DNA of 64,000 bases, taken from the NCBI GenBank assembly GCA_047495785.1, contig JBLDXI010000023.1:434001-498000 (forward strand). Direction: 5' to 3'. Made by a program: the position numbers and the translations under genes. The notes below the pieces were generated by a model that did no database searches, had not been told where the DNA came from, and saw nothing but the letters and a program-made list of their open reading frames with translations. Position 1 is the first letter of the stretch; each line of letters opens with the position of its first letter. This DNA is from Lepidodermella squamata. Lineage: Eukaryota; Animalia; Gastrotricha. Below are positions 25,482-64,000 of this stretch, piece after piece.

Positions 25482-28146
25482 CATAGACAACTCTATATAG
25501 ATCGGAAAGTAACGATCTTTCCGAGTAAATAAATTCACACCAAAACGTGAAAATCCGGGCACGCGACCTTTATTTTTATTCACTCATCGCCCTATCCGCC
25601 CATTGTAAAACTTTCGATTTTTTATTATTTTTAAAAATTACCAGAGAAAATCTTTCATTTCCTACTAATTTCAAAGACATATTCCGGAATGCTAGAAGCG
25701 CTTCTCTAACGAATGAGTCACGTCTCATGAGACGGTTTTTCTTCCAACTTTTAAAAATTGTCTCAAAGTTCGTCACTTTTAAGAAATATCGAGTCTTTCA
25801 GGGCGGTACATTTTTTTATTTTACGCCGAAAAATTCCGATAAAAATACTATGATCTTATTTAATTATTGCTCTGTCATCATCATCATCATCATTTTATTC
25901 GTAAATAAATATTTACAGGATTAGAAGGGCAGGCCACTTACACTAACCCGATTAGTTGTCATATAGTGTTCTATTTTTTGATATTAAGTTTCCTTTACAG
26001 TATTGCAAAAAATTTACACGATTAAGATTATTTTTAAATAAAGCATTCTTCGTAGTAAGAGGTAGGCTATCATCGAAGTCAAAAATATGAGGCGGTAAAC
26101 GATTCCATATATTTACAATACGATTTAAGAAGTAATTTTTATATATAGGCTTCGTAGGATTTTTAAAGTTATTATTAGGGTTAAGTACATTAAATCTGAA
26201 CCGATGACCACGATTATTATTTTGCACAACAATTATATTATTTTTGATGGTTGTTTGCACGGACCCGTTAATAATTTTAAATAAGAAGCAAAGGTCGTAG
26301 ATAAGGCGTCGTTCTTCGAGGGATTTAATATTCAGAATATTGAGGCGCTGTATATAATTCGGCCTAGAGTAGTTAATAGTTGAGAATCCAAGAGCACGGC
26401 GAGTGAAATTAGCTTGTACTTTCTCAATAAGATCAATTATTGTTTTCAGACAGGGTGACCATACAGTTGTGCAATATTCCAATAATGGCCTAACATATAC
26501 ACAGTAGGCCCATTTGAGGATATGAGGAGGTTGGCCTTTCAGGGCCCTGAGAATAAGGTTAGCCCGATTGTAGGCTTTAGAAATTATATCATTAATGTGA
26601 GATTTAAAATTCAACCTATCATCAACTATCAGACCCAAATCTTTATAGCTTGAGCACTTTTTAAGAGGTGAGCCACCGAGGACGTAAGTAGAATGAGGAT
26701 TTTTTGGGCCCAGGTGCAGTACGGCACACTTTTCCAGCGATAACTTTAGTTGCCAAGTTGTGATCCACTTGAATAAATTATTGAGCGATAAAGATAGGCT
26801 TAGAGGCGGAGTCATCGTCACGATAGAAAAGAACGTAAAGCTTACAATCGTCAGCGAAGAGTTTGATCGAGACACCTTTCGGTAGGGAAGAGGTGAGATC
26901 ATTTATATAGATAAGGAATAATAGAGGATCAAGTACCGAGCCTTGAGGTACCCCACTAGAAACAGAACTTTCACTACTTAACGTGCCATTAACGTTAACT
27001 TGCTGAGAACGTTCGGTAAGATAAGAAGACAGCCAATTTATAAGGTTTCCGGAGACACCTAGCGATTCAAGTTTCATAAGCAGTTTTCTGTGGCAAACAG
27101 TGTCGAAAGCTTTAGCTAGGTCAATATATACTATATCCACACAATTCGAACTTTCAATGGCGAAAGACCAGTCGAGGAAACATTCTAACATTTGCGTTGC
27201 AGTGGATTTAAGCCTCATGAAGCCATGTTGTTCAGCTGAAATAATATTATGGTAAAGAAGATAGTCTAATAAGTTATTACGAATAATAGTTTCCATTATT
27301 CTACATGGCGTAGGAGTAAGCGAGATTGGCCTGTAATCAGCAGGATTTTTTGAGTTTCCTTTTTTTGGAATGGGCGTGACGAAGGCTTTTTTCCAAGACT
27401 TAGGAACGTGACCTTGAGACAATGAGAGGGAGAAAATATGAGTCAGAGGTTTAGCTATAGAAGAGCCTAATTTTTTGAAGAAGACAGTAGGAAGGCCATC
27501 TGGGCATATCGAATGAGAATCAGACAGGTTTAGAATAATTTCAAGAGTAGAGTCTTCGTTAAAATTCAAAGATGCGAGACAGTCATTAATACTACTCGTA
27601 AATTGAGGGGTCAAATTATCATCAAGAGTGAAGACAGAGGAGAATTGGTCATTTAGAGCCTCGGCTTTTTCGCGGTTTTCAACACATAGAACACCAGAGC
27701 TATTAAGAAGAGGAGGAATTTTTGAGTGATCGCCTAATTTAGAATTTACAAAGCTGTACAAAGCTGTCCAACGATATTAAACTTGAGCAAATCGGATTTT
27801 GTTTGAATTCTGCGAACGCGTGATAGTACTCTTTCAGCATTTCAGCAATTTTGTAGCTATTTTTAGCTCGCTCAGATTATTATCACCCGAACGCGTACGT
27901 GACAATTTTGCGGAATTCAAACAAATTCTGATTTGCTCCGTTCTCTATGGCTTCTAGTATTCCGGAATATTTTTTTGAAATTAGTAGGAAATGAAAGGTT
28001 TTCTCTGGGAAAATTTTTGAAAATAAACTAAAATGGGCGGATAGGGCGATGAGTGAATAATATAAAGGTCTCTTGCCCACTTTTTGATGTGAATTTATTT
28101 ACTATAGGAAGATCGTTACTTTCCGATGTGTATAGAGTTGTCTATG
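25482..28146. mobile_element. hAT-like non-autonomous DNA element in intron 2 of copy 6 (hosts a LINE)
   Basis: Long imperfect TIRs starting CATAGACAACTCTATA and ending TATAGAGTTGTCTATG. Flanks TTCCTGCT / TTCATGCC match at 6 of 8 (degenerate 8-bp TSD). Confidence 0.8.
25875..27765 (-). mobile_element. 5'-truncated CR1/L2/Jockey-group LINE (reverse transcriptase + C-terminal region, one frameshift)
   Basis: ORF 26778-27761 has the RT motifs [28 protein letters not shown] and FADD. ORF 25952-26902 continues (WQLKLSLEKC, YKDLG, VRPLLEYC) in another frame. The 3' end is AATAAA followed by an (ATG)6 tail. Confidence 0.93.
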
Positions 28147-45691: not shown

Positions 45692-48600
45692 ATGCGAAAC
45701 TTCCTGACTTTCTGCACTGCGGTCTGCTTGGCTCACGTCAGAGGTATGATTTACATCAGAACATATCAGTGGATTTCATAAATTTATGCCGCATATCATA
45801 TAATTTTCCAGATGCCGCTGGCGGGTCGATCGATCCGCTACCTGACTCGGCATCTGTTCCGCTGCCCCAGCTATACGCAACGCCACGCTACATCCCGCAG
45901 TTCTCCTTCGATCGCGAAAACTGGACGATCAACGCCAACAGTGCTATTCATTCATATTACAACTGCGTTACAGTGGCAAATGGTTACAGCCTCAACTCGA
46001 TGGATCCCAGTCAAAACAGGCTTTTCGGAATGGTCGGAGGAGATGTAAGTATTGGGGTTATTGCCCGGAATATTTCGATATTATACCCGGAATGAGGTTA
46101 GCTAAGCTTGATTGAACCTTTCTTTGCGCCCTAGAAGGCAGGGGGATTTTTTTCTAACGAAAATGTTGATAACTATAAGAGTTTCCAGTATCCTACGCTA
46201 ATAATCCATATATCTACATTGCAGTCTCGTGTTTTCAGATAGTTTCAACCGCTATGGGCATTCTGACACCATGGCGTGCCGAATTCGAAGTGGAAATTAA
46301 GTATAAGACAGTCAACTCAAGCGCATGGCTAGGATTCGGACTGGACTCTCGGACCTATTACCCTCCAAGTGAGAGCCTCGCCATTCTAGTAACAATGTTT
46401 CATGTGTTTTTTACAGTTAAAATGACGAATGCATCGTTGGGCTTTGATGGCTTCAGCGGCTACGGAGAAGGCTTTTTTGTTTGGCAAAAGTTGGAAGTTG
46501 GCGGTCGCGTTTATACTACAAACAAAGCGTCAAACTCATACGGTGGTACCGTGACCAAGTTTGGCATTCCATTTGATTCTCAAGCGAATGAAATTTCGGC
46601 GCCTAGTTGCGGCAGCAACTTAGTACTAAACGCGTCCGGCTACATGACGTACCGCATGGTTTTGCAGGGCCTGCTGGAAAAAGCTAACGTGAGTTATATA
46701 TGAGTTTCTCCTGAGAAGTTGAGATTAACAATAACAGATTTATTGCGCCGTGCAAAACTGTTGAATTTCTTTCTGCTGTTTCACAGGTTTCAATTGTGCC
46801 TTTGAGTGGCGGGCAAAGCCTAACAGCAGCAACGTGCTTGATCAATGTCGACGCCCAATTAGAAGTTCAGATTACAAATGGCTTCCTGTTGAGCCCCTTT
46901 TTCATTGGTGTTAACGGACTTGACGGCGAAGTCATAGTTAAGCGATTGTAAGTTGTATAAGCTAATCTTAGGTTCAAAATTGAGAGTGCTGCAAATTCTT
47001 TTGCAACGACTCCAGATGGGATAATTCATAGGAACTATCATTATCTAACCTTGCGCGCAATATGTTCACCTTTGAAAATGAAAAGGTGATCACAAAAGTT
47101 GTACCTGATTGCAGTATGGATAGTGGACCTAAATTCTAAATTTTAAAATGTCTTTATTACAGCTACTATTGGAACTTGCAGCCGACCACTCCTCCGCTTC
47201 TAGATCAATACACGTTGCCATTAGAGAACGGCTGGGCTGGCAAGCCGCAATTCATGCCGTTCGGCTTTGACGCCATGTCCACGAATCCATTAATACCACC
47301 TTCGCGCAGGCTGCCGGGATCAAGCATGTACTCGGCTGGTTACAGGCTTAATAACATCGCGCCTAGCTATTCGACTGTTCAAAAACTAGGGGTAAGCTTC
47401 GCAGACTATTCCTAACTTGTCAATCTTTGTCTTAAAAGAATTAAGTATCGGATAGGAAGGATGCATTTTACAGGTCATGTAAATTAGAACCTTAGCCTGG
47501 GATAAAAGTATTTTCGGGTGCATAAGGTATTGCTCAAATCGAAATCCTGGCTCATAGAGAGAAACCGATTTATTGGTGGTCTGTCTTACGGATATTTACA
47601 GTAACATTGCCTTTTAGACACAGAAGTATATATTTAATTGATATTGGAGAATGGTATGTTTCAGAAACCAGAAACTATGTTTTATGGTTTCGATTGTTAA
47701 TAATTTGAGCAAAGGTGATGATTTACAACTCGAACGCTGTCCTTCAAGACTTGAGATGCCATTTCGACTACATTGATGTCAAAGTTTTGCAGAAGTTTCA
47801 TTGCTTCAGTGGTTAATGAACCCCGGGCATCAATGTAGAGAACATGCACTTCGATTTAGTCTTAATTGTAAGCCTCACCAATGAAGTCGCTGCACGGCAC
47901 GTAGATTGTGCGTTTCTCTTTATTAACCAGTTCGAATTGATCAATTGATGATTCGCATCGGATTGTAGAGTCGATTACCATACCGGTTCGGCTTCCTTTC
48001 CTAATAGCTGGGATGTCGAATCGTCGTGATTGTTGGCCGCACAATGCCCTTCTTCGTTATATCCTTGACCGCGTAGTTCTGTAGCGATTTTCTGGCGGAT
48101 TTTTAGGTTGCGATCATGGATCCTGAAGCTTCCAAGGATGGATATATTTTCTCGTTATTACTATACTCGTTGCCAAAGTCCCAATACACTATCCCAGTTA
48201 CTGACATTCCGATGCATTTACAGGATGTGGGAAGGGTGTTACAGCAATTGTACTGGCGTATCGAGGTGGATTTGGATGTTTACCTCAAACAAGACGCTTC
48301 CGAGGCTTGGTTAGGCATCAACGTCGCGCCTTTCTGGGTTTACCCGGTAGCAGGTTCGTTTCTGAACTAAGCAAAACTAATTCAAGCATATATGCCACAT
48401 TTGTCCAATAAACAGGATCGGTAAACGGGAGTTCGTATGACAATGCTTTCAAAGGCTATGCCGGCATATTTGTAGCGCAGCGAATCGGTATCAATGCCGG
48501 CGAATTTTACGCGACATTCGACCCGATGCAGGTGACTGTTAGCAGCGCGAGCTCGCTATTTCCAAACATGACAGCCATGCCTCTCACCTACAATGTGACA

Positions 48601-50418
48601 ACACCTCCAGCCTGTGGTCTGACCTCTCTTTTCTCGTCACCATCTGGCAATGCCAAGTACCGCGTCGTCATACAAAACCCAAATAATTTAGTTACGGTAA
48701 TAAACAGAAGTATGTTTCCAACATGGTGCACTCTTATGTTTTTTTCGGCAGATGGCGATTGCCCCGTTGCCAGGCAACGGCGATACCCCAAGCTCTATTT
48801 GCTTCTCGAATGTTTCGTACGTGGTGAAAGGCGGCATGACCTTTGTTCTAAGCAGCGTGCAAGGCAATAACGCCGACATCTTCGTTCAAAAAGCGTACTT
48901 TAAATGATCTCTTTATATTCCTCAGTTTATTCTTCTTTATCAAGGTATATGTGGCTACTAACGCCAGGAAATAGAACCCTGCTGCCCACTAAGGTTATAA
49001 CGTCTTCAACGGCATCTTTATCTTCGAGTTCAACCGCTTCGAGCTCAACAGTTCAATCGCTTAGCACTTCAAGTCCGGCTAGCTCTACAAGCAGCGAACC
49101 AGCAACCAGCGTCCTTACTCCAATGGAACCTTTACCAACTACAAATACGCCTCTTCTATCGAACGGCCTAATCAGTACTAAAGCAGTTCAATCAGCCACG
49201 ATGATTGCAGGTATGAAGCAACAAGGTGGGATAGGTTTGAGTGGTGAAGATTCGGCCAAGGAATATCAGCAGGATTTGGATGCTACTAGTCGCTCACCGA
49301 GTGGGTTCCCAATCCCGGCACTATTCACAGGCAACGCCCGTCCAACTGTTAAACTGGCTGATTTGACAAGTTGCCCGTATATAAGTGCCGAGGAACGCAT
49401 GCCGGAAATCGGAACCCTCATATACGCGACTCTAACCTTGGAACGGTTGTTCAAAATCGACACAGCCGAGCAGCAGGTCTCACTTTGGGGATCACTGCTT
49501 CTACAGTGGGTGGTTACATCTTGCGAGGCAGATTACACGGCGCCGGGAAGTGACGTCAAAGAACGGTTGGTTTCGACCAGAAGTAAAGACATCTGGCGAC
49601 CGACGTTGATTTTCGCAAATTCGACAACAGAATTTGATTCGCCGTTGGATTCGGAGGCCAGCGACAAGTTGGACATTGCCTACTACCCGACAGCTCCTAA
49701 CCGTTCGTTGTTTTTCCACTGGAACCGAGTTGGAACTTTTGTGGCACGCTGCCAACTCGACCTTACGACTTTCCCGTTCGATAAGCAATCCTGCGAATTC
49801 ACGGTTGTTTTCGACGAGCCGTCGGAATTTGTCGCGTTCGGCGGAATCTACGTTCGAATTCCAGACTCGCTCGCCAGTGGCATTTGGCAATACACATCAC
49901 GGAAAACCAGTCACGGTGTCATCGCATCACCCACGCAACTCACCGCGAGGGTTTCCTACGCAAAGGTCACGCTGACCTTCGAGCGCGACCCAGGGTACTT
50001 TATCATAAACATGCTAGTTCCGTGCTACATTCTTCTGACTCTCGGCTTCGGAACTTTCTTCATGGATCCCGCTGTTCCCGATAGACCGGCTATCTGTTGT
50101 ACCATAATGTTATCGCTTATCGTAGCTCAGTCTGACGTTTTGCGGAGTGTGCCTGAGACCAGCCAGCAAATATTGTATGCAAACTATATCCTGGGCTTGA
50201 CTGGTACTATTGCTCTTATCGCTATGTACCAGATCATCGTATCGGCTGTTGCTTCGAAACGTGGGGAGAAGTACACCACGGTAGTAAAATGCCGCTTCTT
50301 GCCAGCTATGGAGTTTATCCGCCTATGCGACATCCTCGCGTTTCTCGCAACCTTCGAAGGCATTCTGGGCATCAATGTTTACTTTATTTGGATTGCGATG
50401 CGTGGTCGTGATAATTGA
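45692..50418 (+). CDS. Cys-loop (pentameric) ligand-gated ion channel subunit with a long duplicated N-terminal ectodomain (10 exons, about 1073 aa)
   Basis: Exons 45692-45743 (signal MRNFLTFCTAVCLAHVR), 45812-46044, 46239-46368, 46417-46688, 46787-46947, 47163-47391, 48107-48353, 48416-48696, 48752-48894 and 48945-50418. All introns are GT-AG with consistent phases, summing to 3222 nt. The last exon has IWRPTL..N (loop A), the Cys-loop CQLDLTTFPFDKQSC (C-x13-C), pre-M1 R-x-P-x-YF and four hydrophobic helices. The exon 3 acceptor and exon 8 donor are the least certain junctions. Confidence 0.8.
47697..48105 (-). mobile_element. R2/NeSL/Utopia-type non-LTR retrotransposon remnant (restriction-like endonuclease C-terminus) in intron 6 of the channel gene
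   Basis: Frameshifted minus-strand pieces KIRQKIATELRGQGYNEEGHC / SRRFDIPAI..GMVIDSTIRCE..VNKEKRTIYVP / IEVHVLYIDARGSL..VLKDSVRVVNHHL match the REL-endonuclease pattern (EEVHC, RRxDI, IDPTIRxE, EKxxIYxP, GARG, HHL). Confidence 0.72.
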
Positions 50419-51949: not shown

Positions 51950-54900
51950 ATGCATTTTAATCTGTTGATTTTTCTCGGAATAAGCTCTACCGGCTCGGTC
52001 GTTTATGCTGGAGTGGTCGACGACAGTGTAAGAGCTTGTAAGGTTTCAAGTCAGACTGAAAATTTGTTTTTACAGGTTTTCGGCCGTGCAATAATATCCG
52101 GCCAAATTGCAACAGTTGAGCAAATGCTGAATTCCGGCCTTGTTAACGCCAACTCCATCTCGTATTATCGCCCGGGACGCCGAGCCCCAGCTATAATACA
52201 CGCAGTTCGAACAAATCAAAGCTACGAAATGGTCGATATCCTTCTAAAAAACGGCGCAAATGTCGAGACGAAGGCTGAAGAATTTGATATGAAAACTCCA
52301 TTTCTCTTTGCTACAAGAGCTGGCAGGCTAGATCTAGTGAGACTTCTTGTTGAAAAATACAATGCTTCAACTGACGCTCGAGACAGCAAAGAACAAACGG
52401 CTTTGATGGTTGCATTTGATGGCCCGATCACTATAGACTATCTTCGACTAGTCTATTACTTATTACCATTCGAATCACCCGATTCCAGAAACTCAGACGG
52501 GCAGACTGCCCTTCATAAACTTTGTAATGTTGCAACAACGGATCCAGTGCCGTTTGCTAAACTGCTAGTGGAGCAGTTCAAAATGGATGTCAATGCGAGA
52601 GACAAAGGTGGCGACACCCCGTTGCTAATTGCAGCTAAAACTGGCTATTCGATCACTCTACTTCAGTACATGATCGACCAAGGAGCTGATGCGCAGGCAA
52701 GGAATAACGACGGCGATAACATGTTGCTTCAAGCTTGTCAAATCGATCGTACGGAGTTGAGCCCCTTGACCTTTATCAAGTTCGCAATTGAAGTCGGCGG
52801 CAATGACTTGAACTCAAGGTCAAAATTAGACGGTTGCGACTATCGGCTTCAAATGCGTAGTGGTGCGCAGGTGCGCGACGGGGATCTTGTCGAAATTATG
52901 CGCTACTTAGCTAGCAAAGGCTATGATTTCAACGCTAAGAATGGCAATTTTAGTTATACCGCTCTAATGTCCGCAGCAGCGTCAAATGATCGACAGTTAA
53001 CTCTAGAGGCCTTGCTCGATCTTAGTGTTGACGTGAATGCGAAGAATGACAGGGGCGAGACAGCCTTAGACATTGCGACAATGCGCAACAATAAATACAG
53101 CGTCATCAATCTGAGACGACGAGGTGCTGTCCTGGCTAGTGAACTTAATCTGACATCAACGAGCTCATCATCTACATCTCCGACAAAACCTGAGGCTATC
53201 GTGACTTCAAAGTTTTGGCCACTGACCCCTAGCGACGAGGCAATTGACGATGGTCTGCAACCGATTGTCGGAGCAATTTTCAAGGCAAGATCAACTGTGG
53301 CAATGAAGCCCACGACAGCTCGAGCAGCCGCAAAAGCTGTGCGTTATGAATCGCAGAATCAGCTTAACTCGGTAGGTTAAATATTTACAAGGAGGGGTAG
53401 TCTCGAAGCTGTTCAAATTGTTATGCTTACTTAGTCGATGAAGCTTCGACTCTATCCCCGGCTAATCTTAGCCGAAGGCGGTTCCGCATTGAAACATATT
53501 AGTATCGGCTAAGATGCCGAAGATTGCAGTTGAAAGTCGGCAATAATTTTGATTTCAAAAAAGTTCGCCGATTTTCTCCTTTTTGTAATCTTTCGCTCAA
53601 TTCCCGGCCCATATTAGTTCCGTCCAGTCGGAGGGTAAAAGTGGACTGCAAAACGCGCATAAGTCGAAATTTTTAGAAATTTCAAGGCCGCGTGCGTCAA
53701 AGTCAAAGGGCAAGTTTTGATTATTTAGTCCACTTTTACCCTCCAATTGCGCAACCGACGCTTGGGGGCCGGATGGAACTAATATGGGCCCGGAATTTTG
53801 CTAATCTTTCTTGTCCCTCGCCTTATTGTTCTTCTTTCCTGGCGAATTTCTTTGGAAAGACCTATAAAGTACACAACCAGCTCAGCACATCAAAATGGGC
53901 CTATTTAACCGATTTTTCTTGATTTTTTCAGCGATTTGCTCAAAACGTGAAAAATGGGGACGTTATTGCTGTTCGCGAAATGATTCGACTCAACCAATCT
54001 CGAGGGGACGCGGTTTTCATAGAGCAGCAAAGAGACTATATGGATTGCCAGACGTTTATTTACTACCAACCCATCCCAGCAGTGGCTGCTGCTTTAAATG
54101 TCGTCTATCCTTCTTTGGAAATGCTTCGAATGCTGCTAGAAACCGATGGAGATGCCAATGCGATTCATCCAGAGTTCATGAAATCTGCGCTAATGCTTGC
54201 CGCCGAACACGGTCGCCTTGATCTGGTGCAATTGCTCTGTCAATACGGGGCTAATATTGATTTCGAAGTGAACGGGAGAACGGCGATACTCGACGCTGCG
54301 GCCACGAAACTTGAGGTCGCGAAATACCTCTTTTCTCAAGGAGCGTCTAAAAACGTGGATCAAATAATTTTCGTGGCTTGCCGAATCTCCACAATGCCTG
54401 CTCTCCCCATGGTAAAATTCGCTATTGACGAAGCTGGGAATTCTGTTTCTGACAAGGATACTGAAGGCAGGACCCCGCTTGCAGTTGCTGCAATGTACTT
54501 AAAAACGATAGATCGAATTCAAGTCTACGAATATCTGATATCAAAAGGGGCTGACGTCAATCATACCTGGATAAATTCGGCCGAATACCGAAATTATACA
54601 TTGCTGCATCACGCGGTACGTGTAAAAGACTTGGAACTGGCTAGATTCCTAATCAAAGCCGCTGGTATCAGCCTTGAAGACCGCGACTCGACTGGAAAAA
54701 CTCCATTATTGATTGCAGTTGATAGCCAAGTCAACAATATTATTGATCTGCTCGTCGGCTCAGGCGCAGATGTATTGGCGGTTGACAAAATTGGTAACAA
54801 CGCCTTTTTGTCGGCTTGTCAGATTGAGTACATGCCTTTCACGTGGGCCAGGCGATTTGTGACCTTCGAAGGAGTGGACGTAAATTCTCAGAACAACAAC

Positions 54901-55263
54901 AATGACACGTGTCTAACCCTAATTAACGGCGGCTACGAATTCAACGGTTTTGCCAAGTTTCTTGTCCAGAAAGGGTACGATATCCATCGCAAACTTCGAA
55001 GAGGAGATACCGTTTTGCATATCATCGCAGCTCGAGAAACCACGAAGAATGTTGTCGAGCTGATTGAAGCTGGATCTAATGTTAATGCGCTGAATGATGA
55101 AGGCTATGCCCCACTCGATTTAGCATTGATTTACGGTAATACTCGCGCTATATCTGCGCTAAGGGATGCTGGAGCTGACACGGCTAAACCACTGCCATTT
55201 TATCTAACGACAGTCACCACTTCCGCTTGGCGAATGGGTACAGCAACTACAGACCACAACTAA
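51950..55263 (+). CDS. Secreted ankyrin-repeat protein, array copy 9 (about 901 aa)
   Basis: Exons 51950-52027, 52076-53371 and 53932-55263. Intron 1 (48 nt) is in frame and stop-free, so the ORF track includes the signal peptide. Confidence 0.87.
53595..53801. mobile_element. Short (207 bp) MITE of the same MULE/foldback family, in intron 2 of copy 9
   Basis: Starts GCTCAATTCCCGGCCC and ends GGGCCCGGAATTTTGC. Shares GAGGGTAAAA..GGAC with the 30119 element. Perfect 9-bp TSD TAATCTTTC. Confidence 0.85.
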
Positions 55264-55419
55264 CCAAAACAGCTTGATTTCCTCGATATTCTTTGCCTTT
55301 TTCGTCGAGTGCTCAGAATAAAATGGATCTGTACCCTCTAGCTTTGGTGTTGGGTGTTGCTACATATACAATGCTGGAAAAATTAATGCGTGAATGTTCC
55401 CATAATTCAAGGGACTGAC

Positions 55420-55720
55420 AACGAGACTATTGGTCATCATGACGGCAGTTTTGAGATCAACTCTAGCTCGCCAGCTTGTTTGAGAGCGAACGAGCCCTTT
55501 CGAGCCTTGCCTTTCGCCATCTCAACGAGTTCGTCGAATAAGAGCTTATTGTCAATACGAGGGCGAGCGTGTTCATATATTCAGACGGCCTAATCGCAAC
55601 GCCACCGATGGTGACCGTGAAGTCGGGCGGCGTCGAAAGGTGCGGCTTGACCAGCATAAACTTCAATTGTTTACCATTTACGGCCAGGCTATTCTGATCA
55701 ATGTGGTTTAAACACCGAGT
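55420..55720 (-). mobile_element. Degraded LINE RT C-terminal fragment
   Basis: NSLAVNGKQLKFML...VTIGGVAIRPSEYMNTLA, then after a frameshift IDNKLLFDELVEMAKGKA. This is the typical post-RT LINE motif (N-x-L-x-x-N..K..LG..D..L.F). Confidence 0.6.
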
Positions 55721-56182
55721 TGATTGAACAATATACTGTTTTTTACACAAAACGCGCCAATCGCGATTTCGCCGGTCGTTTTGGTTGTTAATATTATCAT
55801 AATTTAAATTTATTGCCACAAATAATAGCGGAATTGTCAATTTCATCGCCAACTCAAGCCAGCGGAATGTCATCGAAGCCAAATTAACAATTTTTGGAGC
55901 CTCCAAGGCCATTGACACGGCTTGCCGGTAGATTCCAGAATAAAGTATTGGCTTTCCAGATCGCGCATCTTCTTCCCCTAATCTGTAAGCTGATCTGTAA
56001 GCTGATCCGGCAGTTTTTTGAGCAACCTGATAGTTTTTTGAATTCGAATTTTCTTCAGCTCATCTTATAGGAGTCATTTGTAAGTCATTAGTAAGTCGCG
56101 TTTGCAACTGGCAGTTTTTCGGCGCTGGTTGCTCGGGTTTTTCACGTGTAGAGATGCCACATCGTGTGTTTGGCGCTCATGT

Positions 56183-56202
56183 TGTGTGTGTGTGTGTGTG
56201 TG
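56183..56202. repeat. (TG)n microsatellite
   Basis: About 10 TG units. Confidence 0.9.
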
Positions 56203-56565
56203 CTGGCCCAGCTAGCTTGGATATCTTTTCACCGTATCTAATTCTTATAACTATCCTGTTTTGCGCAGAGCCGATGCTGACAACTTTCTGGCGATTGCGT
56301 GCTGCTGCCTTTTTGTAACATAGTCTTATTTTTTCAACTGCCATGGCTTCTGTATAGTTGTATGTTGAAACTATATTATGCTTTCATTTGGTTGATGCAA
56401 ACACGGCGGGTCGCTGGGTGCATTGTGTAATTTTCGGTCCCTTTCTCCGTCACTCGAAAATGCTCGGTCAATTAATTATGCCAGTAATGGGAAACAGGGA
56501 TATTTAAGAGCTGAAACCGCGGCTGTTATTCATTTTTCATTTCTTGAGAATTACTTGAGCTAATC

Positions 56566-57918
56566 ATGCCATTTCTAATGTTCGCTCTCATAGCCGCTGC
56601 ATGTGGCATTGTCACAGCTTGCCCTGCAACATCGACAACGCCCTGTCCAAGATTAGCCACGGCAACTGATTCCCCTGGAACTTGCCCGAATGGCCAGGCC
56701 TGTTACACCACATCAAACCCCTGCAATTCTGGCTCTTCGTGTGTCGCATCGGCTAACGTATGTGATACAACTGCGAACAACTGCGTCGCCAAAAGTGGCG
56801 CTTCTTCGTGCACTATCGGCCAGACTTGCACGCCGTCTGGCAATGTCTGCGACGCTACTGCAAAGAATTGCATCGCGAAGGCGGATACTCAATGCCCATT
56901 AGGACAAGCTTGCACGAACCCAGTAAGCTGTTACCTCGATTACCGTTATAATTTTACTCGTATGTGAATTAATGTGAACAGGTAACCTACAAGTTGTGTT
57001 TGATAACTAAGACGCAGGGCTCATTGGCGTCTATCGCTAAAACTAGTGTTCCATTCTGCACGGCAAATGGTGGCGCGTGCAACTCGGTTCTGACAACCGG
57101 AACCAGTGTAAGAAACTCTGAGTTCATTAGTTTATTCACTTTGAACTAAAGTGACTTGACAAGGGCCATGGCATAAGATATTTCGAAGAAGGCAGGACAA
57201 AGAATCCTCAATTTGAGTAGCGTTGGACTACATGCAAATGGCAGATTGCTGACGATATATTAGTACTTCAGGAATTCGCATTCGCCTCGTTTTCGGCTTT
57301 CTGACGGTACCCTGTACCCATTTCAAAGGATAGCCCTGACCTTTTCGAGATTTTCTATGCCAATGCCTTTGGCTTAGTCAAAGTGGTCCCGACTATGGAA
57401 ACCTGAATGCAACCTTTGTACAACTTTGATGCAAATGAGATTATGGGCTATTTCTTTACAGGCAGCTCCTGCCGATCCCAATACGTTTCCTTCGTTTGCG
57501 GACTGCTGCAATGCAGCCAAAGACGCTTCTTCTGTCATGTACGAGGTTGTTCCTGGCACGCCGCCTGTATTGGCATGTATACAAAAAAAGGACGCTGACA
57601 ACCCGTACAAAGTAGCCTCTGCTACGGTTGGTGGAGCAGTCGGGGGTGATCCTAGCGGATTATGTTTCCGCTTCCCTTACACTACATCGGTCGACACATA
57701 TGTTGCTGTCTCTACTTTAATAGTAGGTTTTTGACAAACAGCTTGTTCATGTTGTTTATTTTTTCTCGTCATTTCAGGTAACCAAACCCCCCGGTGTGTA
57801 CAGCGCTGCAACTTACCAAGAGTGCTGCGGGCTTCTATCGCCGAGTCCCCTCAGCCATGCAGCCACAGGCAGTGCTTATGGCGCAAGTGGTTTTGATACG
57901 TGCACTTACAGAGAATGA
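56566..57918 (+). CDS. Secreted cysteine-rich protein (4 exons, about 294 aa), family unknown
   Basis: Exons 56566-56922, 56982-57107, 57462-57722 and 57778-57918, all GT-AG phase 0. Signal MPFLMFALIAAACGIVTA. Repeats CxxGQxC...NVCDxTAxNCxAK. TATA-like TATTTAA at 56501. Confidence 0.78.
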
Positions 57919-59645
57919 ATGGCAAGGAAGAATAGTATTACAATGAAGATGAAGCATTCTGGCCAACTTTTTGCCTGTCTGGCTTTTCAGGCCAGGGCGA
58001 CCCTTTTTCTTATGACTGTTACTGCTCTATATGGGATTCAGATGTCCGCCACAGTTTGTATGGGTCGTGTGTGCCAATAAGCCAAATTTGTCATTAATTT
58101 CATTTGGCTAATCGATCCATGATCTATCTTGTGACTATCTCTCATTCATTTTGGCAACTGTTTATTAAATTAGGCGCATGCAAAATGAGATCAATATTCG
58201 TGATGTCTATATTTTCGCTCCGCACCCAGCATCTGCGCTTTGTTCCGATTACCCATAGCTCGCGGGCTACAAACTCAGATTTTAATAAAATATTCGTGGA
58301 ATTATAATGAATATTACGATGAAGATGAAGATGAAGCAGTCATTAATTTCATTATGCTTGACCTATGCTTGTTATTAGAACTGAAGCGACTTTACTAAGA
58401 AAGGATGGATACTTACATGTGTAGTTCGTCAGTTTTCCCATGTTTTTACGTAAAAACAGTAAAAAGCCGTTAAAACATGTAAAAAGGTGGTCGATTTTTA
58501 CATGTAAAACCAACAAAAATATGTAAAAACCAATCGCGATAATCATAGGTCATAATTAACAAGTAAGCTTGAGTAGATGAAGTTCTACAAGATAGTGAGC
58601 TCTTTCTCGTCTTTTTTAGCCTATGATTTTCTTAGCAGCATGAGATTCGCCGCCTCTCAGCGCCAGTCCCGCTCCTAATACTATTAATCCTACTCCTCGT
58701 CCTGAAGAGCATCGCCAGTTCTCACACTCCTAACTCAGCCTCTCTTACCACTACTCTCTTGAAATGAATGACCGCTTTCTTGCTATTTAATTGAATACTG
58801 AACATCGGTGTGCACCTGCGCTCTTGCCGGCAAAGAAAGTCGGTAAAGAAAATGAAAGCGGACACGCTGAATCTATAATGGCTTCTTCAGAGTTTTCCTC
58901 CGTCAAAGCCATCATAGTTTACAAGTTTCCATTTGCAAGTTTGTTTCGAAATCGTGTTTAGAGATGGTCCGTTTCTGTTGGTTGCGGGTTTTGTTCGTTC
59001 GATGGTCTTCCTAAACTTCCATACGTGGAAGCACAAGACCTTCAAGGGATCGAACGATTCTGTAAAGTCAGCAACTCACTCTACTTTACGAGAGGAACTG
59101 TCATAATCGAAGGACCTAATTTGACCTAATCTGAAATGCTGTATCGTGTCTGTGATTTGAATTTTCAGTCAAACAATGACTGCTGCTAACTTCCTGCCGA
59201 ATATGGGGGATTCACTGTGATGGTACTGCCGAAAAACGATTATTCCTGGTTTAAATCCGTGCAACATACATTGAAAATAAATAAGTAGGACGTAATAAAA
59301 AGAAGCGCGTGTTGTGACTCGAAGCCAAACTTTTTTTACTAGTTTTCAGCTGAAAATAGATGCATTGATGTCATCGTGGTGCCGTTGGCGTGATGCATTT
59401 TCATTTCAATCTACACTGGTCACAGGCTAGCCTTAGTGAGAAGATATCAAAACAGATTAAAAAAAATAAATACCTAAACGTCGTTGTGTTGGTGAAATTA
59501 CTACGAAAGAGTAATGGCAGAATAATCTTCTTATATAAGTAGTTAAATTGCCTACCCAATTTATAGCGTTGGGCTCACGCCACTTTCAAGCAAAAGAAAA
59601 CTTTAGTATTATTTTCCACGTCAATTCCAGTATTTCAGCTTGCAG

Positions 59646-62600
59646 ATGCGTTCTGTTTTAGTACTGACATCTGCGATCGCACTGGCCAATGCCCAAATCG
59701 ATTTCAACAGCGTAAGAAAGTAATCAGAATCTCTATGACTCTTTCATTACAAAAGCTGCATTCTCAGGCTTTTTTTGTTGCCGTTGGAAATGGCCAGCTC
59801 TCGACCGTCAGGCAAATGCTTGCGAGTGGCTTAGTGAATGCGTCTACAACATCGGTGATCCAGAACGATGTCGTAGCTCCAGCACTTATCAACGCTGTTC
59901 GGGTAAAAGCCAGACCATAATTATCCGAATTCCGATACTTTTTCAAGATTCCGCTAGCGCTTCGGTAACTCTCAATTTGACGGTAGTTATTTTACCGCAG
60001 CACGCAAACAAGGTCACCTCAATGCTTTAGCTGTAAAACGAACGCCGCCGCGTCTGCAAATTTTTACCGCACGCGGCGTTAGTTTTACCGTAAAAGCACT
60101 TGCGGCAGTTACTCTTTAACGCAAGCTTTTGTCTTTCCACTTCGCAAGAAGCATGCTGCTTATGAGCCATGGAGGAATCCTATGGTAACGCGTCATTTTA
60201 TAACACCCTAAACCAACAGGAAATGTTCCTGCCCAGTTGGTTATTTTTTGCCTAGACGGAAAAAGTGATTCTGCCCGATGTTTCTGCCCGCTGTTTCTGC
60301 CCGCTCAAACGATTAGGGTGGATTTTTTATTTTCGAAAATCAATTGATGCTCTCGAAAATTCGGGAAAACCTCTCACCTGAAATAATGTTGCACAACTTC
60401 AATTTCCGTTCCCAGTCCCTTTACTACAACCTTCAGACTCTGACCAAACGAGTGAACAAGTGAATAACCTTTATTAGAATGTTTAAACTTTAAAACAAGT
60501 GTTTGGGCCGGATTAATTGTTAATAACGACGGAGCAATTCGAGAAATTGAAGATCGGCATGGGTTTAGCTTGCTTTACGGGTGGCTCATCGCGCGGGTCA
60601 TTTTCGACGTTTCGAAGCAGCAGCGTTTGCGAGAAATGCGACTCGGCCACCACCAATCCTTCGGTTGGCTTGATCTCTTGTGCAGACACACCCGAAACTG
60701 CAGCTGATTGTCCATCACCGAAACCGACAGCCAGTTTGTCGCTGATACTTCGTCGACAAATCGGCTCCAGTGCTGCTTGGTTTTCCGAGCTGTGCCGTTT
60801 GCTTCAAAACCAGCCACGAAATTTTCGACTTCTTGAATGAACTCCGACGTATCACCCTCTTCATCGGATTCTTCTTCTTCGATATCAGCATCAAGTTCTC
60901 GTTCGAGAAGTCGAATTGGATCGGATTCTTCGCGCTGTTTCACTTCCACGGAGCCGTCAGCGAGAGCACCGAGGCCCAGGTCGCCAATATCAAAAGTGAT
61001 CTCCATTGAAAATTCGACGGAAATTCGCAATATTCAATTGATAATAAAACAAGGAAATGAACAACGAACAAAAAAATTCAAAAAAAAAAATTTGCTACAA
61101 ATTTTAAGCTGGATTTCTTATTTTCGTTATTAACAACGGTCATCTTTCATACGCACTATACACCATTCCCCATTTTCACTCGTCCGAGTGTCGGATTAAC
61201 GAAAATAACCAACTGGGAAGGAACAGGAACTCTTCCCTTGTGTCTCGGGCAAAACCTCGAATTCAGCCCTTGAAAATACCCTCGGGCTTCGCTTCGCTGC
61301 GCTCCGCTACGCCCTCGGGCATTTTCAGCGGGCAGAATTCTCGGTTCTGCCCTCAACACCGGGAAGAATTCCTTATTTCTGTTATACTCTTACTCTACAG
61401 CGGTTGCGTAAGACGCTCTATTAATTACCGTTTACGGTAAATTAATTACCGCAACTAGAGAACAATGGCTAGATGGAGTTACCGTCAAATGGAGTTATAC
61501 CGAAAGGCTAACGATTCCGGATGTAAAAGTGTTCAAATTTATTCTCATCTGTAAGGTTTTGCTCATTAAAAAAAGCTTCAGGTGTCACAACTTTCTCTGA
61601 CAATCGATCGACTTTCGAAAAAGACTGGCTCTCAATTCTTAAAATTGAATTATTTTCTTCTCAAAGGGGGAAAGGGGGTGGGAAATGAGGGTTATCGTAA
61701 ACCCCAGAAAACCACAGGGGGACCCTTTGGTCCTAAATTTGGGGTCCGAAAATACCCCTAGTTCGAGAATACTACTTCGCGCATTGAACCTTAGCAATGA
61801 TTGCTGAATGGAGCTTCAACAATCCGGCCGAGAATCCGCTTTGTTTGGGGAATAATTGTGATTAAAAAAAAAACTCGTCACAAGTCCAAACCCAAGACCA
61901 ATCGCATCAGTAACTTCTTGAAATATTGGCACTTATTTGAATAACTTATTTGAATAACTTGTTTTAAATTCAAACAGGCGAATAATTACGATATGGTGCA
62001 ACTTCTGCTCGAGAACGGCGCCAATGTTGAGGAGACGAACGAACCAGCTAGAGATTACGAGTTCACAATGCAGCGAACCCCACTGCTATGGGCGGCATAC
62101 CAAGGCCAGCTGGATATTGTCCGGCTTATGCTTCAAAAGTACGGCGCCAAATTGGACGCTGCCGATCGGGACGGCTATTCAGTTCTCAGCACACTTTTCC
62201 AACTCAAAATTCAGCCGCAGAACTACTGGTCCTACGTCGCACTCACCAGCTACTTGCCTGGGGAATTGCTGAATTGGAGAAGCGCAAGGGGTCAAAACGC
62301 TTTACACTTCGCCAGCCTTGTAAGCCCTACAGACCCGATGCCTTTCGTTCGAATTCTAGTTGAAAAGCATAAATTCGACGTCAATGCGAGAGATAACAAT
62401 GGTTATACTCCTCTACTGATGGCGGCTAGAGTTGGCCGATCACTAGACCTGCTTCGTTACCTCATCGAAAAAGGAGCCGACCCGAAGGCGGCGACTGACG
62501 CCGGTGAAAACTTGCTATTGAGTACTTGCCAAATCAGCAACAGACGCGAGGCTTTAAACTTCATCAAATTCGCTATTGAAGTCAGTGGCAACGACGTTAA

Positions 62601-64000
62601 TTCTGAGATTGATGGGAAACGGTGTGACAGCCTGTTTCGCTACTCCGCCGGGTTTGACGCTGAGCACAACCGGTTTTGGATTCAACTCATTAAATACTTG
62701 GTTAGTCAAGGATTCGATCTTAACCCGAGCAATGTGAATACCCCGCTGATGGTCGCAGCTGCGGCTGAAAGATCCTTGCCGTATTTGGAGACTCTGATTG
62801 ACATGGGCGCCGATGTTAACGCGACGAATTACGAGGGCAAAACTGCGCTGGATTTGACGAGGCCGTCGCGTGATCAGGTTAACATTGGAGCTCTTGTAAG
62901 GCGAAAGGCTGCTTGGAGCCGAAATTTCACACGCGTTGCTACTTTTTCGACGCCTAATCGACGGACAACTACTCGGCCAATGACTACAACAGACTCTGGC
63001 AGAAAGTCGATTGATGCTAAGATTGATTTCATGGCGGATGATGCGATTGAACTTGTTCCGGTCGAAATGGGTGGTCCGAAGCTTAAGATCAGGCCGCTGG
63101 ATCGCCGAAGCAACCTGACAACGAAGGTTGACATCAGTCCTGGTGATTATCAGCTCACCCAGGCCCAAGCTGAACTGGATGCGGTTAGTTTTATCTCATA
63201 GATATCTAGTTGAACAAAATGAATTAGCCGTGGGACAGTACGCGTTGATTTCACTCTTCTCTTTACAGAAATTTATCAAGTTCGTGACGGATGGCAACAT
63301 GGAAGGTATTCGTGATATGATAGAGCAGCAGAAGGCCCGAGGCAATGCCCTGCTCTTCAAGCTTCAACAATCCCCCATGTCACGCAAAGCAAATTACATC
63401 ACCATCCCAGCTGTGGCTGCTGCTCTCAGCTCTCAGTTAAAAGGAAACGACACTTTCTACATGGTCGCGGCGCTTCTTCAAAATGGCGGCGATGCTAACG
63501 CTGTTCATCCTGAAACTGGCTTAAGTGCTATAATGATGGCTGCTGCAAACGGCAGTTTCGAATTGGTTGACCTTCTGCTGGAATATAACGCAGATATCGA
63601 TATGGAAACTTTCTCGAAAAGGCCGCGGACTGCTCTCCTCGAAGCTGCTGCAGCCAATCAACTCGAAATGGTCGACTATCTTTTGTCAAAGGGAGCTATC
63701 GCCTACAAGGATGAGCTGATTTTCGCATTCGACGCAGGAAATAAAGTTCCGGTTTTGCCGTTGGTCAAATACGCTGTTGAGAACGTATCCAATTCAGTAA
63801 ATGGCACGGGCAAGGATGGCTATACCCCGTTTGTCAAAGCCGCTTTGCAATTGCGAAATAGTCCAGATCGCCTTGAAATTCTGACGTATTTGCTAGAAAA
63901 TGGAGCCGATGCTGACTCCAGGGTGTCCACAGATCGATTCTCAAACAAAACCTTACTTCACCTTTCCATTTTGGAGAAGGATTACAATTTGACGCAGTTC
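59646..64000 (+). CDS. Divergent secreted ankyrin-repeat protein, array copy 10 (4+ exons, runs off the window)
   Basis: Exons 59646-59711 (MRSVLVLTSAIALANAQIDFNS), 59768-59902, 61978-63183 and 63269 to beyond 64000 (KFIKFVTDGNMEGIRDMIEQQKARGNAL...IPAVAAAL). Same architecture plus one extra phase-0 intron. Confidence 0.82.
59952..61513. mobile_element. TIR DNA element with 4-bp TSD in the extra intron of copy 10
   Basis: Imperfect TIRs CG(C/T)TAGC..TTCGGTA..ACTC..ATTTGACGGTA. ATTC at 59948-51 and 61514-17. Superfamily unassigned. Confidence 0.65.
60199..61386 (-). mobile_element. Crypton-like element remnant nested in the above
   Basis: TATAACA...TGTTATA ends. Inverted CCCAGTTGGTTATTTT / AAAATAACCAACTGGG. 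Terminal stem-loop at 61200-61385 with CCCTCGGGC-TTCGC-GCTACGCCCTCGGGC. ORF 60575-61030 has an acidic tract and EVENFVAGFEANGTARKTKQHWSRF, like the N-terminus of Crypton/DUF3504 tyrosine recombinases. Confidence 0.55.

What the first reader, a model, noticed from the sequence alone, without database searches (positions are those of the whole stretch)
45692..50418. Cys-loop ion channel fused to two tandem copies of an unrecognised ectodomain via a Ser/Thr stalk
Seen: splicing in consistent phases gives signal peptide, repeat 1 (exons 2-5), repeat 2 (exons 6-9), S/T stalk, then a complete pLGIC. The repeats are homologous: PLPDSASVPL..FSFD..GYSLNSMDPS vs PLLDQYTLPL..FGFD..GYRLNNIAPS; WRAEFEVEI..SAWLGFGL vs WRIEVDLDV..EAWLGINV; FSGYGEGFFVWQKL vs FKGYAGIFVAQRI; APSCG..SGYMTYRMVLQ vs PPACG..SGNAKYRVVIQ; VSIVPLSG vs MAIAPLPG. 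Intron positions and phases (0,1,0,2) also match. Known: animal Cys-loop subunits normally begin directly with the ligand-binding domain. Extra N-terminal sensor domains are described mainly in prokaryotic pLGICs such as DeCLIC. The WLGFG motif recalls DOMON beta-sandwich domains. Inference: a chimeric sensory channel displaying up to 10 extra binding domains per pentamer.
Basis: partly seen in the sequence, partly recalled or inferred. Interest (0 to 1): 0.85.

Follow-up and report, generated by a model that had tools for sequence, protein, structure and literature searches.

The report
Ion channel with two-domain extracellular antenna
This gene most likely encodes a Cys-loop (pentameric ligand-gated) ion-channel subunit that carries two copies of an unclassified extracellular domain on a sugar-coated stalk, a layout that the papers I read describe only for bacterial channels and that close environmental relatives encode in single uninterrupted reading frames.

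Summary
A ten-exon model on the + strand (45692-50418, all GT-AG, consistent phases) gives a 1034-aa protein. It has a signal peptide, two homologous ~262-aa units (26% identity, E 9e-16, matching intron positions and phases), a 120-aa Ser/Thr-rich linker and a complete pLGIC module. The channel model has pLDDT 88.9 and every top Foldseek hit is a pLGIC.

No RNA data exist: the only public run is DNA, so the 48894/48945 splice is not directly shown.

Comparative evidence supports the fusion. The nearest relatives come from ENA metagenome contigs. They encode the same head family, then a Thr-rich stalk or short linker, then the same channel clade, in one ORF (P0151, P0150, P0006). In L008 this runs through one final exon, and three intron positions are shared with the window.

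The exon-10 ORF alone has no signal peptide. Differences from the DNA run are 19 synonymous to 5 non-synonymous.

The head has no Pfam or PDB sequence relative. The DOMON guess is unsupported and the fold is undetermined.

I found no paper describing eukaryotic pLGICs with N-terminal heads. First readers of this scan noted similar fusions at many other places in this genome (unchecked).

Function is inferred only.

The parts
45692..45743 (+). Exon 1: start codon and signal peptide (MRNFLTFCTAVCLAHVR)
   Evidence: Hydrophobic core with 9-aa Kyte-Doolittle maximum 2.22, similar to the signal peptides of relatives at 2.2-3.2. Donor is GTATGA, phase 1.
45812..46947 (+). Head unit 1 (aa 18-282), exons 2-5: 45812-46044, 46239-46368, 46417-46688, 46787-46947
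   Evidence: Homologous to unit 2, E 9e-16. An HMM built only from relatives' heads hits it at 17.5 bits. Differences from DNA run X1 in these exons: 6 synonymous, 1 conservative. Conserved Cys pair C203/C246.
47163..48894 (+). Head unit 2 (aa 283-543), exons 6-9: 47163-47391, 48224-48353, 48416-48696, 48752-48894
   Evidence: Same intron positions and phases as unit 1. The relatives-only HMM hits it at 15.9 bits. hhalign of exon 4/8 alignment A2 against relatives' alignment A5 gives E 4.9e-4. Conserved Cys pair C469/C513.
48895..48944 (+). Intron 9 (50 nt), the inferred junction between heads and stalk/channel
   Evidence: Phase 2, the same as intron 5 between the units. Flanking residues are alike (VKRF|YYWNLQP against VQKA|YMWLLTP). 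Splice sites are weak (GTACTT...AAG). If unspliced, the frame stops at TGA 48905-48907. Not confirmed by RNA.
48945..49302 (+). Linker (aa 544-663): remnant of a unit start, then a Ser/Thr-rich mucin-like stalk
   Evidence: The core at aa 558-640 is 43% Ser+Thr and 60% S+T+P+A. The AF2 model is disordered in the 30 residues of the linker that it includes. Relatives have Thr-rich stalks at the same place.
49303..49995 (+). Channel extracellular ligand-binding domain (aa 664-894), including the clade-specific Cys pair C687/C737, loop A WRPTLIFANS and the Cys-loop at 49750-49794
   Evidence: Pfam Neur_chan_LBD 6e-8. PDB phmmer 1.4e-11. Both Cys-loop cysteines are invariant, and the extra Cys pair is nearly invariant, in 53 sequences. 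AF2 shows ten strands.
49996..50418 (+). Transmembrane domain: M1 49996-50064, M2 50080-50151, M3 50170-50250, short M3-M4 loop, M4 50326-50400, stop TGA 50416-50418
   Evidence: AF2 gives four helices with pLDDT above 90. M2 carries -1' Asp, 0' Arg, 6' Thr and 9' Leu. The M3-M4 loop is about 25 aa, as in all clade members. 11 synonymous against 2 non-synonymous differences lie in exon 10 as a whole.

Best explanation
One protein-coding gene (45692-50418, + strand, 10 exons, 1034 aa) encodes a subunit of a pentameric ligand-gated (Cys-loop) ion channel with a long extracellular N-terminal extension. The extension has a signal peptide, two tandem ~260-aa disulfide-containing head domains of a family without Pfam or PDB sequence relatives, and an ~80-120-aa Ser/Thr-rich linker that is presumably O-glycosylated.

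Shown: the exons, phases and internal repeat; the pLGIC fold and motifs; and the existence of relatives with the same head family, a stalk or linker, and the same channel clade in uninterrupted reading frames.

Inferred: that intron 9 is spliced as modelled, and that five subunits assemble so the channel displays ten heads.

Proposed mechanism (inferred, about 40%): the heads determine what the receptor recognises, namely an extracellular macromolecule, glycan or surface. They capture or concentrate it above the glycocalyx. Occupancy or cross-linking of the heads then acts on the top of the canonical extracellular domain, whose gating machinery is intact (Cys-loop FPFD, pre-M1 Arg, 9' Leu gate). 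The pore has an acidic -1' residue, which weakly suggests cation permeation. The very short M3-M4 loop argues against a classical synaptic scaffolded receptor.
For: Gene model with consistent phases and GT-AG introns. Repeat homology E 9e-16, with introns in identical alignment columns. pLGIC identity from Pfam, PDB sequence search, AF2 (pLDDT 88.9) and Foldseek. No candidate start in exon 10 has a signal-peptide-like core (maximum 1.2 against 2.2 for exon 1).

Nearest relative P0151 (37% identity in the channel) is one 812-aa ORF, L001:637-3075, holding two head units, a Thr stalk and the channel. A 6-unit head HMM hits it at E 1.5e-7. The same HMM hits P0150 (one unit, short linker and channel start in one ORF) at 2.5e-8 and P0006 at 4.7e-5.

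L008 carries signal peptide, unit 1, unit 2, Thr stalk and channel. Its last exon runs from the end of unit 2 into the stalk without an intron. Window introns 4, 7 and 8 match L008 introns 1, 3 and 4 in column and phase.

A relatives-only HMM hits both window units (17.5 and 15.9 bits). hhalign gives E 4.9e-4. In the channel tree the window groups with P0151, L008, P0002, P0004 and P0006 inside a head-bearing clade (SH-aLRT 98). Differences from DNA run X1 are 19 synonymous to 5 non-synonymous in the modelled frames, in both head and channel exons.

Heads in this channel clade are diverse (Laminin_G_3/pentraxin-like, EGF, small Cys-rich, and this family) on one conserved channel. That fits heads acting as specificity modules.
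Against: There is no transcript evidence: the single run found is genomic DNA with the introns present. Intron 9 has the weakest splice sites of the gene, and without splicing the head ORF ends at TGA 48905-48907. Homology between the window's heads and the relatives' heads is remote: pairwise z is 2.8-4.8, and the window-only HMM does not hit P0151. L008 has a 100-N scaffold gap inside its stalk. A flexible Ser/Thr stalk is a poor conduit for allosteric signals, so the gating role of the heads is speculative. Nothing here shows that the heads bind anything.
Confidence: 0.8

Rival explanations
1. The fusion is real, but the heads only position or anchor the channel in matrix, cuticle, mucus or glycocalyx, or cluster it. 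Gating is by a conventional small ligand, ion or pH at the canonical extracellular domain, independent of the heads.
For: The stalk is long and flexible. The channel's extracellular domain keeps conserved Trp residues (W104, W133 and W230 of alignment A3), which I take as possible pocket residues, and intact coupling elements across the clade. Bacterial N-terminal domains were proposed to pre-concentrate ligands that then bind the ligand-binding domain (PMC549065).
Against: The great diversity of heads on one conserved channel clade suggests the heads carry specificity rather than a generic anchoring role. No ligand is known for either part.
Confidence: 0.35
2. Two separate genes: a secreted two-unit protein ending at TGA 48905-48907, and an independent channel gene starting within 48904-49300.
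For: Intron 9 has a weak donor (GTACTT) and an AAG acceptor. There is no RNA evidence. An ATG sits at 48904 at the head of a 504-aa ORF.
Against: No candidate Met before the ligand-binding domain has a signal peptide, so a stand-alone product could not place its binding domain outside the cell. Relatives have heads and channel in one ORF. Only 37 nt separate the stop from the acceptor. The residues after the acceptor resemble the start of unit 2.
Confidence: 0.08
3. A decaying or non-functional copy of an expanded family, whose open frame is fortuitous.
For: The family is large and arrayed according to first-stage notes (unchecked). The window shows mobile-element activity: a reverse-transcriptase ORF and a repeat in intron 6.
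Against: All ten exons are open, with intact splice sites and all conserved pLGIC residues. Differences from the DNA run are 19 synonymous to 5 non-synonymous.
Confidence: 0.04

Closest known systems
Uncharacterised head-bearing pLGIC clade in ENA metagenome contigs (P0151, P0150, P0006, L008 gene; sister members P0025, P0015, P0030, P0105 with Laminin_G_3 heads)
   Same: Same channel clade: 30-37% identity, an extra nearly invariant Cys pair before and within the ligand-binding domain, the GFP(I/V)P...C(P/E)(Y/F)I entry motif, -1' D/E and 0' R, and a very short M3-M4 loop. Same order of signal peptide, head(s), Ser/Thr stalk and channel. P0151, P0150, P0006 and L008 carry the same head family, and L008 shares three intron positions with the window.
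   Different: They are unnamed, unpublished gene calls from unknown small animals. Most are intronless or have fewer introns. Their stalks are Thr-rich rather than Ser-rich. Head sequence identity to the window is in the twilight zone (about 20-25%).
DeCLIC and other prokaryotic pLGICs with N-terminal domains (PBP-I, Cache, MCP-N fusions; PMC549065, PMC9897478, 10.1101/2025.02.27.640520)
   Same: A pLGIC core preceded in the same polypeptide by extra extracellular or periplasmic domains thought to sense or modulate.
   Different: Those are prokaryotic and have a Pro-loop rather than a Cys-loop. They show no sequence similarity to these heads: PDB profile searches with the head alignments A2, A5 and A6 gave nothing significant. 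I did not look for a mucin-like stalk in them. Here the heads are separated from the ligand-binding domain by an ~80-120-aa Ser/Thr linker.
Canonical animal Cys-loop receptors (nicotinic, 5-HT3, GABA-A, glycine, GluCl)
   Same: Fold, Cys-loop with FPFD, loop A W-x-P, pre-M1 Arg, M2 6' Thr and 9' Leu, four transmembrane helices. Best PDB sequence matches are nicotinic alpha subunits.
   Different: Only about 16-19% identity. Canonical receptors have no N-terminal extension and have a long M3-M4 intracellular domain. Here the loop is about 25 aa, and Pfam Neur_chan_memb is below its cut-off (10.8 against 28.1 bits).
Arthropod ESM-Atlas clusters annotated ConA-like/Pentaxin + Ldl_recept_a + Neur_chan_LBD (854 aa) and Ldl_recept_a + Lectin_C + Neur_chan_LBD (595 aa)
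   Same: Animal proteins that automatic annotation shows as extracellular modules placed N-terminal to a pLGIC ligand-binding domain.
   Different: Different head domains. They were found only as structural neighbours of an Atlas hit, not shown to be close kin. I did not inspect their sequences, and no paper on them turned up.

Membership tests
Pentameric ligand-gated ion channel (Cys-loop receptor) superfamily | Extracellular beta-sandwich ligand-binding domain followed by four transmembrane helices | tested here: met
   AF2 with a 53-row alignment gives pLDDT 88.9 and pTM 0.82, with ten strands and helices at 265-288, 295-317, 326-354 and 373-405. The top 50 Foldseek PDB hits are all pLGICs, E about 1e-19 to 6e-20.
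Pentameric ligand-gated ion channel (Cys-loop receptor) superfamily | Cys-loop: two cysteines 13 residues apart enclosing F/Y-P-F/Y-D | tested here: met
   CQLDLTTFPFDKQSC at aa 813-827 (window 49750-49794). Both Cys and the Pro are invariant in 53 sequences.
Pentameric ligand-gated ion channel (Cys-loop receptor) superfamily | Sequence-profile membership (Pfam Neur_chan_LBD and Neur_chan_memb above gathering score) | tested here: inconclusive
   Neur_chan_LBD scores 32.8 bits against a cut-off of 26 (met). Neur_chan_memb scores 10.8 against 28.1 (not met). The transmembrane domain is nevertheless modelled confidently and aligns to nicotinic M1-M3.
Pentameric ligand-gated ion channel (Cys-loop receptor) superfamily | Pore-lining M2 with 9' Leu gate and 6' polar ring | tested here: met
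   D(-1') R(0') PAICC T(6') IM L(9') in the window, conserved across the clade alignment.
Pentameric ligand-gated ion channel (Cys-loop receptor) superfamily | Pentameric assembly and ligand-gated conductance | not testable with these tools
   Needs expression, electrophysiology or structure determination.
Head-bearing pLGIC clade (environmental relatives) | Extra Cys pair (one before the ligand-binding domain, one in W-x-V-x-x-C), short M3-M4 loop, -1' acidic / 0' Arg | tested here: met
   C687/C737 correspond to the nearly invariant C59/C109 of alignment A3. The loop is about 25 aa. The window sits in the 19-row clade with SH-aLRT 98.
Head-bearing pLGIC clade (environmental relatives) | Signal peptide, head domain(s), Ser/Thr stalk and channel in one polypeptide | tested here: inconclusive
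   Met in relatives as single ORFs (P0151, P0025, P0005, P0015) and in L008. In the window it depends on splicing of intron 9, which is supported by phase, homology and the lack of a signal peptide on exon 10, but not by RNA.
Head-unit family shared with L008, L004, P0150, P0151, P0006 | Detectable homology of the ~260-aa unit, conserved Cys pair, shared intron positions | tested here: met
   No Pfam family of any kind hits the exons at E up to 1 or the relatives' heads at E up to 5. The three-dimensional fold could not be tested.
Concanavalin A-like lectin / Laminin G / pentraxin superfamily | Profile or fold similarity to ConA-like jelly rolls | tested here: inconclusive
   Sister-clade heads are of this kind: Laminin_G_3 at 6e-16, and profile A7 hits the PTX3 pentraxin domain at 1e-3. 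The window's head family shows no link to them (hhalign probability 0.2%). There are only weak leads: Atlas SPRY/Neuralized at 0.84 and a GH16 glucanase at E 0.83. AF2 of a 150-aa piece failed with pLDDT 33.6.
DeCLIC-type N-terminal-domain pLGICs | N-terminal domain homologous to the DeCLIC lobes and packed on the extracellular domain; prokaryotic | tested here: not met
   PDB sequence and profile searches with head alignments returned no pLGIC N-terminal domain. The gene has spliceosomal introns, and the relatives' contigs carry animal genes. A long Ser/Thr linker intervenes.

The most novel reading that the evidence does not exclude
This gene is one member of a large, undescribed animal family of modular 'antenna' pLGICs. 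In this family, interchangeable extracellular heads (this new domain family, LamG/pentraxin-like, L-lectin-like, EGF and others) on mucin-like stalks set the specificity of a conserved channel that lacks an intracellular domain. That would make it an ionotropic pattern-recognition or contact/chemosensory receptor class, with a head fold not yet seen in Pfam or the PDB.
Probability: 0.35. Interest if true: 0.9.

Novelty: new variant of a known kind. Interest (0 to 1): 0.74.

Why it matters
The pLGIC papers read here treat N-terminal accessory domains as a prokaryotic trait and animal subunits as stereotyped, beginning at the ligand-binding domain (PMC549065; 10.1101/2025.02.27.640520).

This locus and its relatives point to an animal clade that broke that rule repeatedly. 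Different extracellular heads were grafted onto one channel core through mucin-like stalks, and the intracellular domain was lost.

If the heads confer ligand specificity, this would be a new way to couple recognition of macromolecules or surfaces to fast ionic signalling. It would also be a natural modular scaffold for engineering biosensor channels.

The locus also defines an unannotated ~260-aa extracellular domain family that needs a fold and a ligand.

Tried and rejected
RNA test. The only run holding the locus (X1) is genomic: its contigs include the introns and show no splice joints. The decisive transcript test could therefore not be done.

Word-indexed protein searches. Two searches with exon 10 found nothing. 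The first was swamped by Ser/Thr words. Both were limited to proteins of 270-857 aa.

Searches for the head. There are no paralogues in the window. Pfam on every exon found nothing for the heads. The Atlas gave only weak SPRY/Neuralized leads for exons 3-4 and nothing for exon 8. A PDB profile of exon 4/8 gave a GH16 glucanase at E 0.83, which is not significant. A JGI metagenome scan with the exon 4/8 alignment found nothing.

Window-only comparisons with relatives' N-termini. The window-only repeat HMM, BLAST, hhalign and Smith-Waterman tests against the relatives' N-termini were negative. The link appeared only after an ORF in L004 was found and the family was enlarged.

Structure of the head. 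AF2 of the 150-aa exon 3 / intron 3 / exon 4 read-through gave pLDDT 33.6 and is unusable. The whole spliced head could not be folded, because the spliced protein has no reference and I did not type it in.

Head family against known folds. hhalign of the head family against LamG-type heads gave no similarity. PDB profiles of the relatives' heads gave nothing.

Alternative splicing of intron 9. The CAG at 48923-48925 would give a 31-nt intron and a frameshift to an early stop, so I rejected it. A donor at 48884 has no in-phase acceptor.

Organism and sample. A literature look-up of the metagenome sample codes found nothing. The organism was not identified.


Full report
**Gene model and internal repeat**

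I rebuilt the gene from the raw sequence. Ten + strand exons join in consistent phases through nine GT-AG introns of 48-832 nt. The exons are 45692-45743, 45812-46044, 46239-46368, 46417-46688, 46787-46947, 47163-47391, 48224-48353, 48416-48696, 48752-48894 and 48945-50418. Together they give a 3105-nt reading frame of 1034 codons.

The product begins with a hydrophobic signal-peptide-like segment. Two units follow, at aa 18-282 and 283-543. They align end to end at 26% identity, BLASTP E 9e-16, with z = 23-26 against shuffles.

Their introns fall in the same alignment columns with the same phases (0, 1, 0, then 2 at the unit's end).

**The channel part**

The channel part is a genuine and complete pLGIC.
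- Pfam Neur_chan_LBD passes its cut-off, at 32.8 against 26 bits.
- phmmer against PDB sequences puts nicotinic alpha subunits first, E 1.4e-11, aligned from the ligand-binding domain through M3.
- An AlphaFold2 model built on 53 relatives has mean pLDDT 88.9 and pTM 0.82, with a ten-strand sandwich and four long helices.
- Its top 50 Foldseek matches in the PDB are all pLGICs.

The Cys-loop (CQLDLTTFPFDKQSC), loop A W-x-P, pre-M1 Arg, and M2 with -1' Asp, 0' Arg, 6' Thr and 9' Leu are all present.

Two features depart from textbook animal receptors. The M3-M4 loop is only about 25 residues. An extra, nearly invariant cysteine pair brackets the start of the ligand-binding domain.

**Is the fusion real?**

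The direct test failed for lack of data. The only public run holding this locus is genomic DNA; its contigs contain the introns and show no splice joints.

That run was still useful. Of 24 exonic differences from the window, 19 are synonymous in the modelled frames, and they are spread over head and channel exons. Both parts are therefore under purifying selection in these frames.

Intron 9 is the weak link. Its donor is GTACTT and its acceptor AAG, whereas the other eight acceptors are CAG. Without splicing, the head frame stops at TGA 48905-48907.

Several points favour splicing:
- The intron is in phase 2, like intron 5 between the two units.
- The residues around it resemble those around intron 5 (VKRF|YYWNLQP against VQKA|YMWLLTP).
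- No methionine ahead of the ligand-binding domain in exon 10 is followed by a signal-peptide-like core. The 9-residue hydropathy maximum is 1.2 or less, against 2.2 for exon 1 and 2.2-3.2 for relatives' signal peptides.

**Comparative evidence**

The strongest evidence is comparative. An exhaustive HMMER search with the channel module found 1846 relatives. The closest come from ENA metagenome assemblies.

Many of these are single uninterrupted ORFs that run signal peptide, N-terminal head(s), Thr-rich stalk and channel. P0025 (1099 aa) has Laminin_G_3 domains, and others include P0015, P0021, P0030, P0105 and P0005.

The best hit, P0151, is 37% identical in the channel. It is an 812-aa ORF (L001:637-3075) with about 400 residues and a Thr run ahead of the channel.

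At first none of these heads looked like the window's. Then an ORF just downstream of the second-best channel hit (L004:2114-2785) matched the window's repeat profile. This led to L008.

L008 is a 10.8-kb contig with a five-exon gene:
- a signal peptide, unit 1 and unit 2;
- a last exon that reads from the end of unit 2 straight into a Thr-rich stalk;
- after a 100-N scaffold gap inside that repetitive stalk, a continuation into a channel 32% identical to the window's.

Three further lines tie the window's heads to this family:
- Window introns 4, 7 and 8 coincide in alignment column and phase with L008 introns 1, 3 and 4. The alignment was made without intron information.
- A profile of six units then detects the same head in P0150 (E 2.5e-8; one unit, short linker and channel start in one ORF), P0151 (1.5e-7) and P0006 (4.7e-5).
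- A profile built only from the relatives hits both window units, at 17.5 and 15.9 bits. hhalign gives E 4.9e-4.

The homology is remote but supported from several independent directions.

In a channel-only tree the window groups with P0151, the L008 channel, P0002, P0004 and P0006. This group lies inside a clade (SH-aLRT 98) that contains all head-bearing proteins. The only other long rows, P0028 and P0143, carry two channel modules in one product. Head type and channel subclade therefore go together.

I put the single-gene fusion at roughly 0.85-0.9.

**What is the head?**

It remains unclassified.
- No Pfam family hits any exon, or any relative's head, at permissive thresholds.
- Profiles of up to eight rows find no PDB sequence relative.
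- There is no profile-profile similarity to the LamG/pentraxin-type heads of the sister subclade. Those heads do hit PTX3 pentraxin domains and other ConA-like jelly rolls.
- The language-model atlas gave only weak SPRY/Neuralized leads for one piece and nothing for another.

The 150-aa read-through piece folded badly (pLDDT 33.6).

What can be said is limited. Each unit has a conserved Cys pair (C203/C246 and C469/C513). It also carries several N-glycosylation sequons, and invariant motifs such as R-x-E-x-[DE], G-[LFI]-x-[LVF]-x-Q and Y-[RKQ]-[MV]-[VI]-[IL]-Q. These are consistent with a folded, secreted, probably all-beta domain.

**Mechanism**

Shown: a pLGIC core with intact gating elements, preceded by heads and a 120-aa linker whose core is 43% Ser+Thr.

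Inferred: five subunits would display ten heads on O-glycosylated stalks.

The same channel clade carries very different heads in different genes. The M3-M4 loop is also too short for synaptic scaffolding. I therefore favour heads as specificity modules of a non-synaptic sensor, at about 40%. On this view they capture a macromolecular or surface ligand and influence the top of the extracellular domain by load or cross-linking.

The main functional rival, at about 35%, is that the heads merely anchor or position a channel gated conventionally. This echoes the 'pre-concentration' idea proposed for bacterial fusions (PMC549065). The -1' Asp weakly suggests cation permeation. None of this is tested.

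**Comparison with what is known**

The papers I could search describe N-terminal domains only for prokaryotic pLGICs. [quoted passage not shown]

Nine full-text searches found no description of animal pLGICs with lectin-like or other heads.

Such architectures do exist in databases under automatic labels. Examples are arthropod clusters with Pentaxin/LDLa or C-type lectin plus Neur_chan_LBD.

First-stage readers of this scan flagged similar fusions at many other places in the same genome, with L-lectin-like, LamG/pentraxin and SRCR heads. I did not check those notes.

I therefore class this as a new variant of a known kind: a pLGIC with an undescribed eukaryotic architecture and an unannotated head family.

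**Caveats**
- There is no transcript evidence.
- Head homology to the relatives is remote.
- The relatives are anonymous metagenome contigs from unidentified small animals. Their contigs carry astacin, BBS7 and Kunitz genes with ~50-nt introns.
- The organism of the window was not identified.
- The head fold and all functional statements remain open.

Noticed in passing
window 1559-44878 and 51950-63201 (+ strand): The rest of the window is a tandem array of at least 16 ankyrin-repeat ORFs, all on the + strand (Pfam Ank_2 E 1e-15 to 1e-63). The channel gene is embedded in it. In two environmental relatives an ankyrin gene also lies directly upstream of a head-bearing pLGIC gene (L008:4857-5999, L002:95-2005).
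   Followed up: partly
window 25952-27761 (- strand): Reverse-transcriptase ORF (RVT_1, E 6e-27) overlapping a second 316-aa ORF without a Pfam match. Probably a retroelement inserted in the ankyrin array.
   Followed up: no
window 47392-48223 (intron 6): The long intron holds a repeated element. Depth in DNA run X1 roughly doubles at 47437-48104, and one contig replaces 47999-48055 with 22 other letters, which is a structural polymorphism.
   Followed up: no
window 46369-46416 (intron 3): This 48-nt intron is in frame and has no stop codon. Retention would insert 16 residues into head unit 1 without breaking the frame.
   Followed up: no
L004:452-3458: Tandem arrangement in a relative. A channel ORF (P0002, which has no signal peptide of its own and so is probably the last exon of a head-bearing gene) is followed 546 nt later by the signal peptide and head units of the next family gene. 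L004 and L007 hold the same three head-gene calls and both stop 43 nt after the last one, in the intron after the second unit's first exon.
   Followed up: partly
P0025, P0015, P0021, P0030, P0105, P0016, P0005, P0007 (relatives): The same channel clade carries quite different heads in single ORFs: two or three Laminin_G_3/pentraxin-like domains, an unknown domain plus EGF, or a small Cys-rich module. Most have Thr-rich stalks. One member (P0010) has a signal peptide and no head.
   Followed up: partly
window 49372 and 49522 (C687, C737); alignment A3 columns C59/C109: A nearly invariant extra cysteine pair, specific to this clade, brackets the N-terminal helix and first strands of the ligand-binding domain. 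It is probably a disulfide that fixes the point where the stalk enters the channel.
   Followed up: partly
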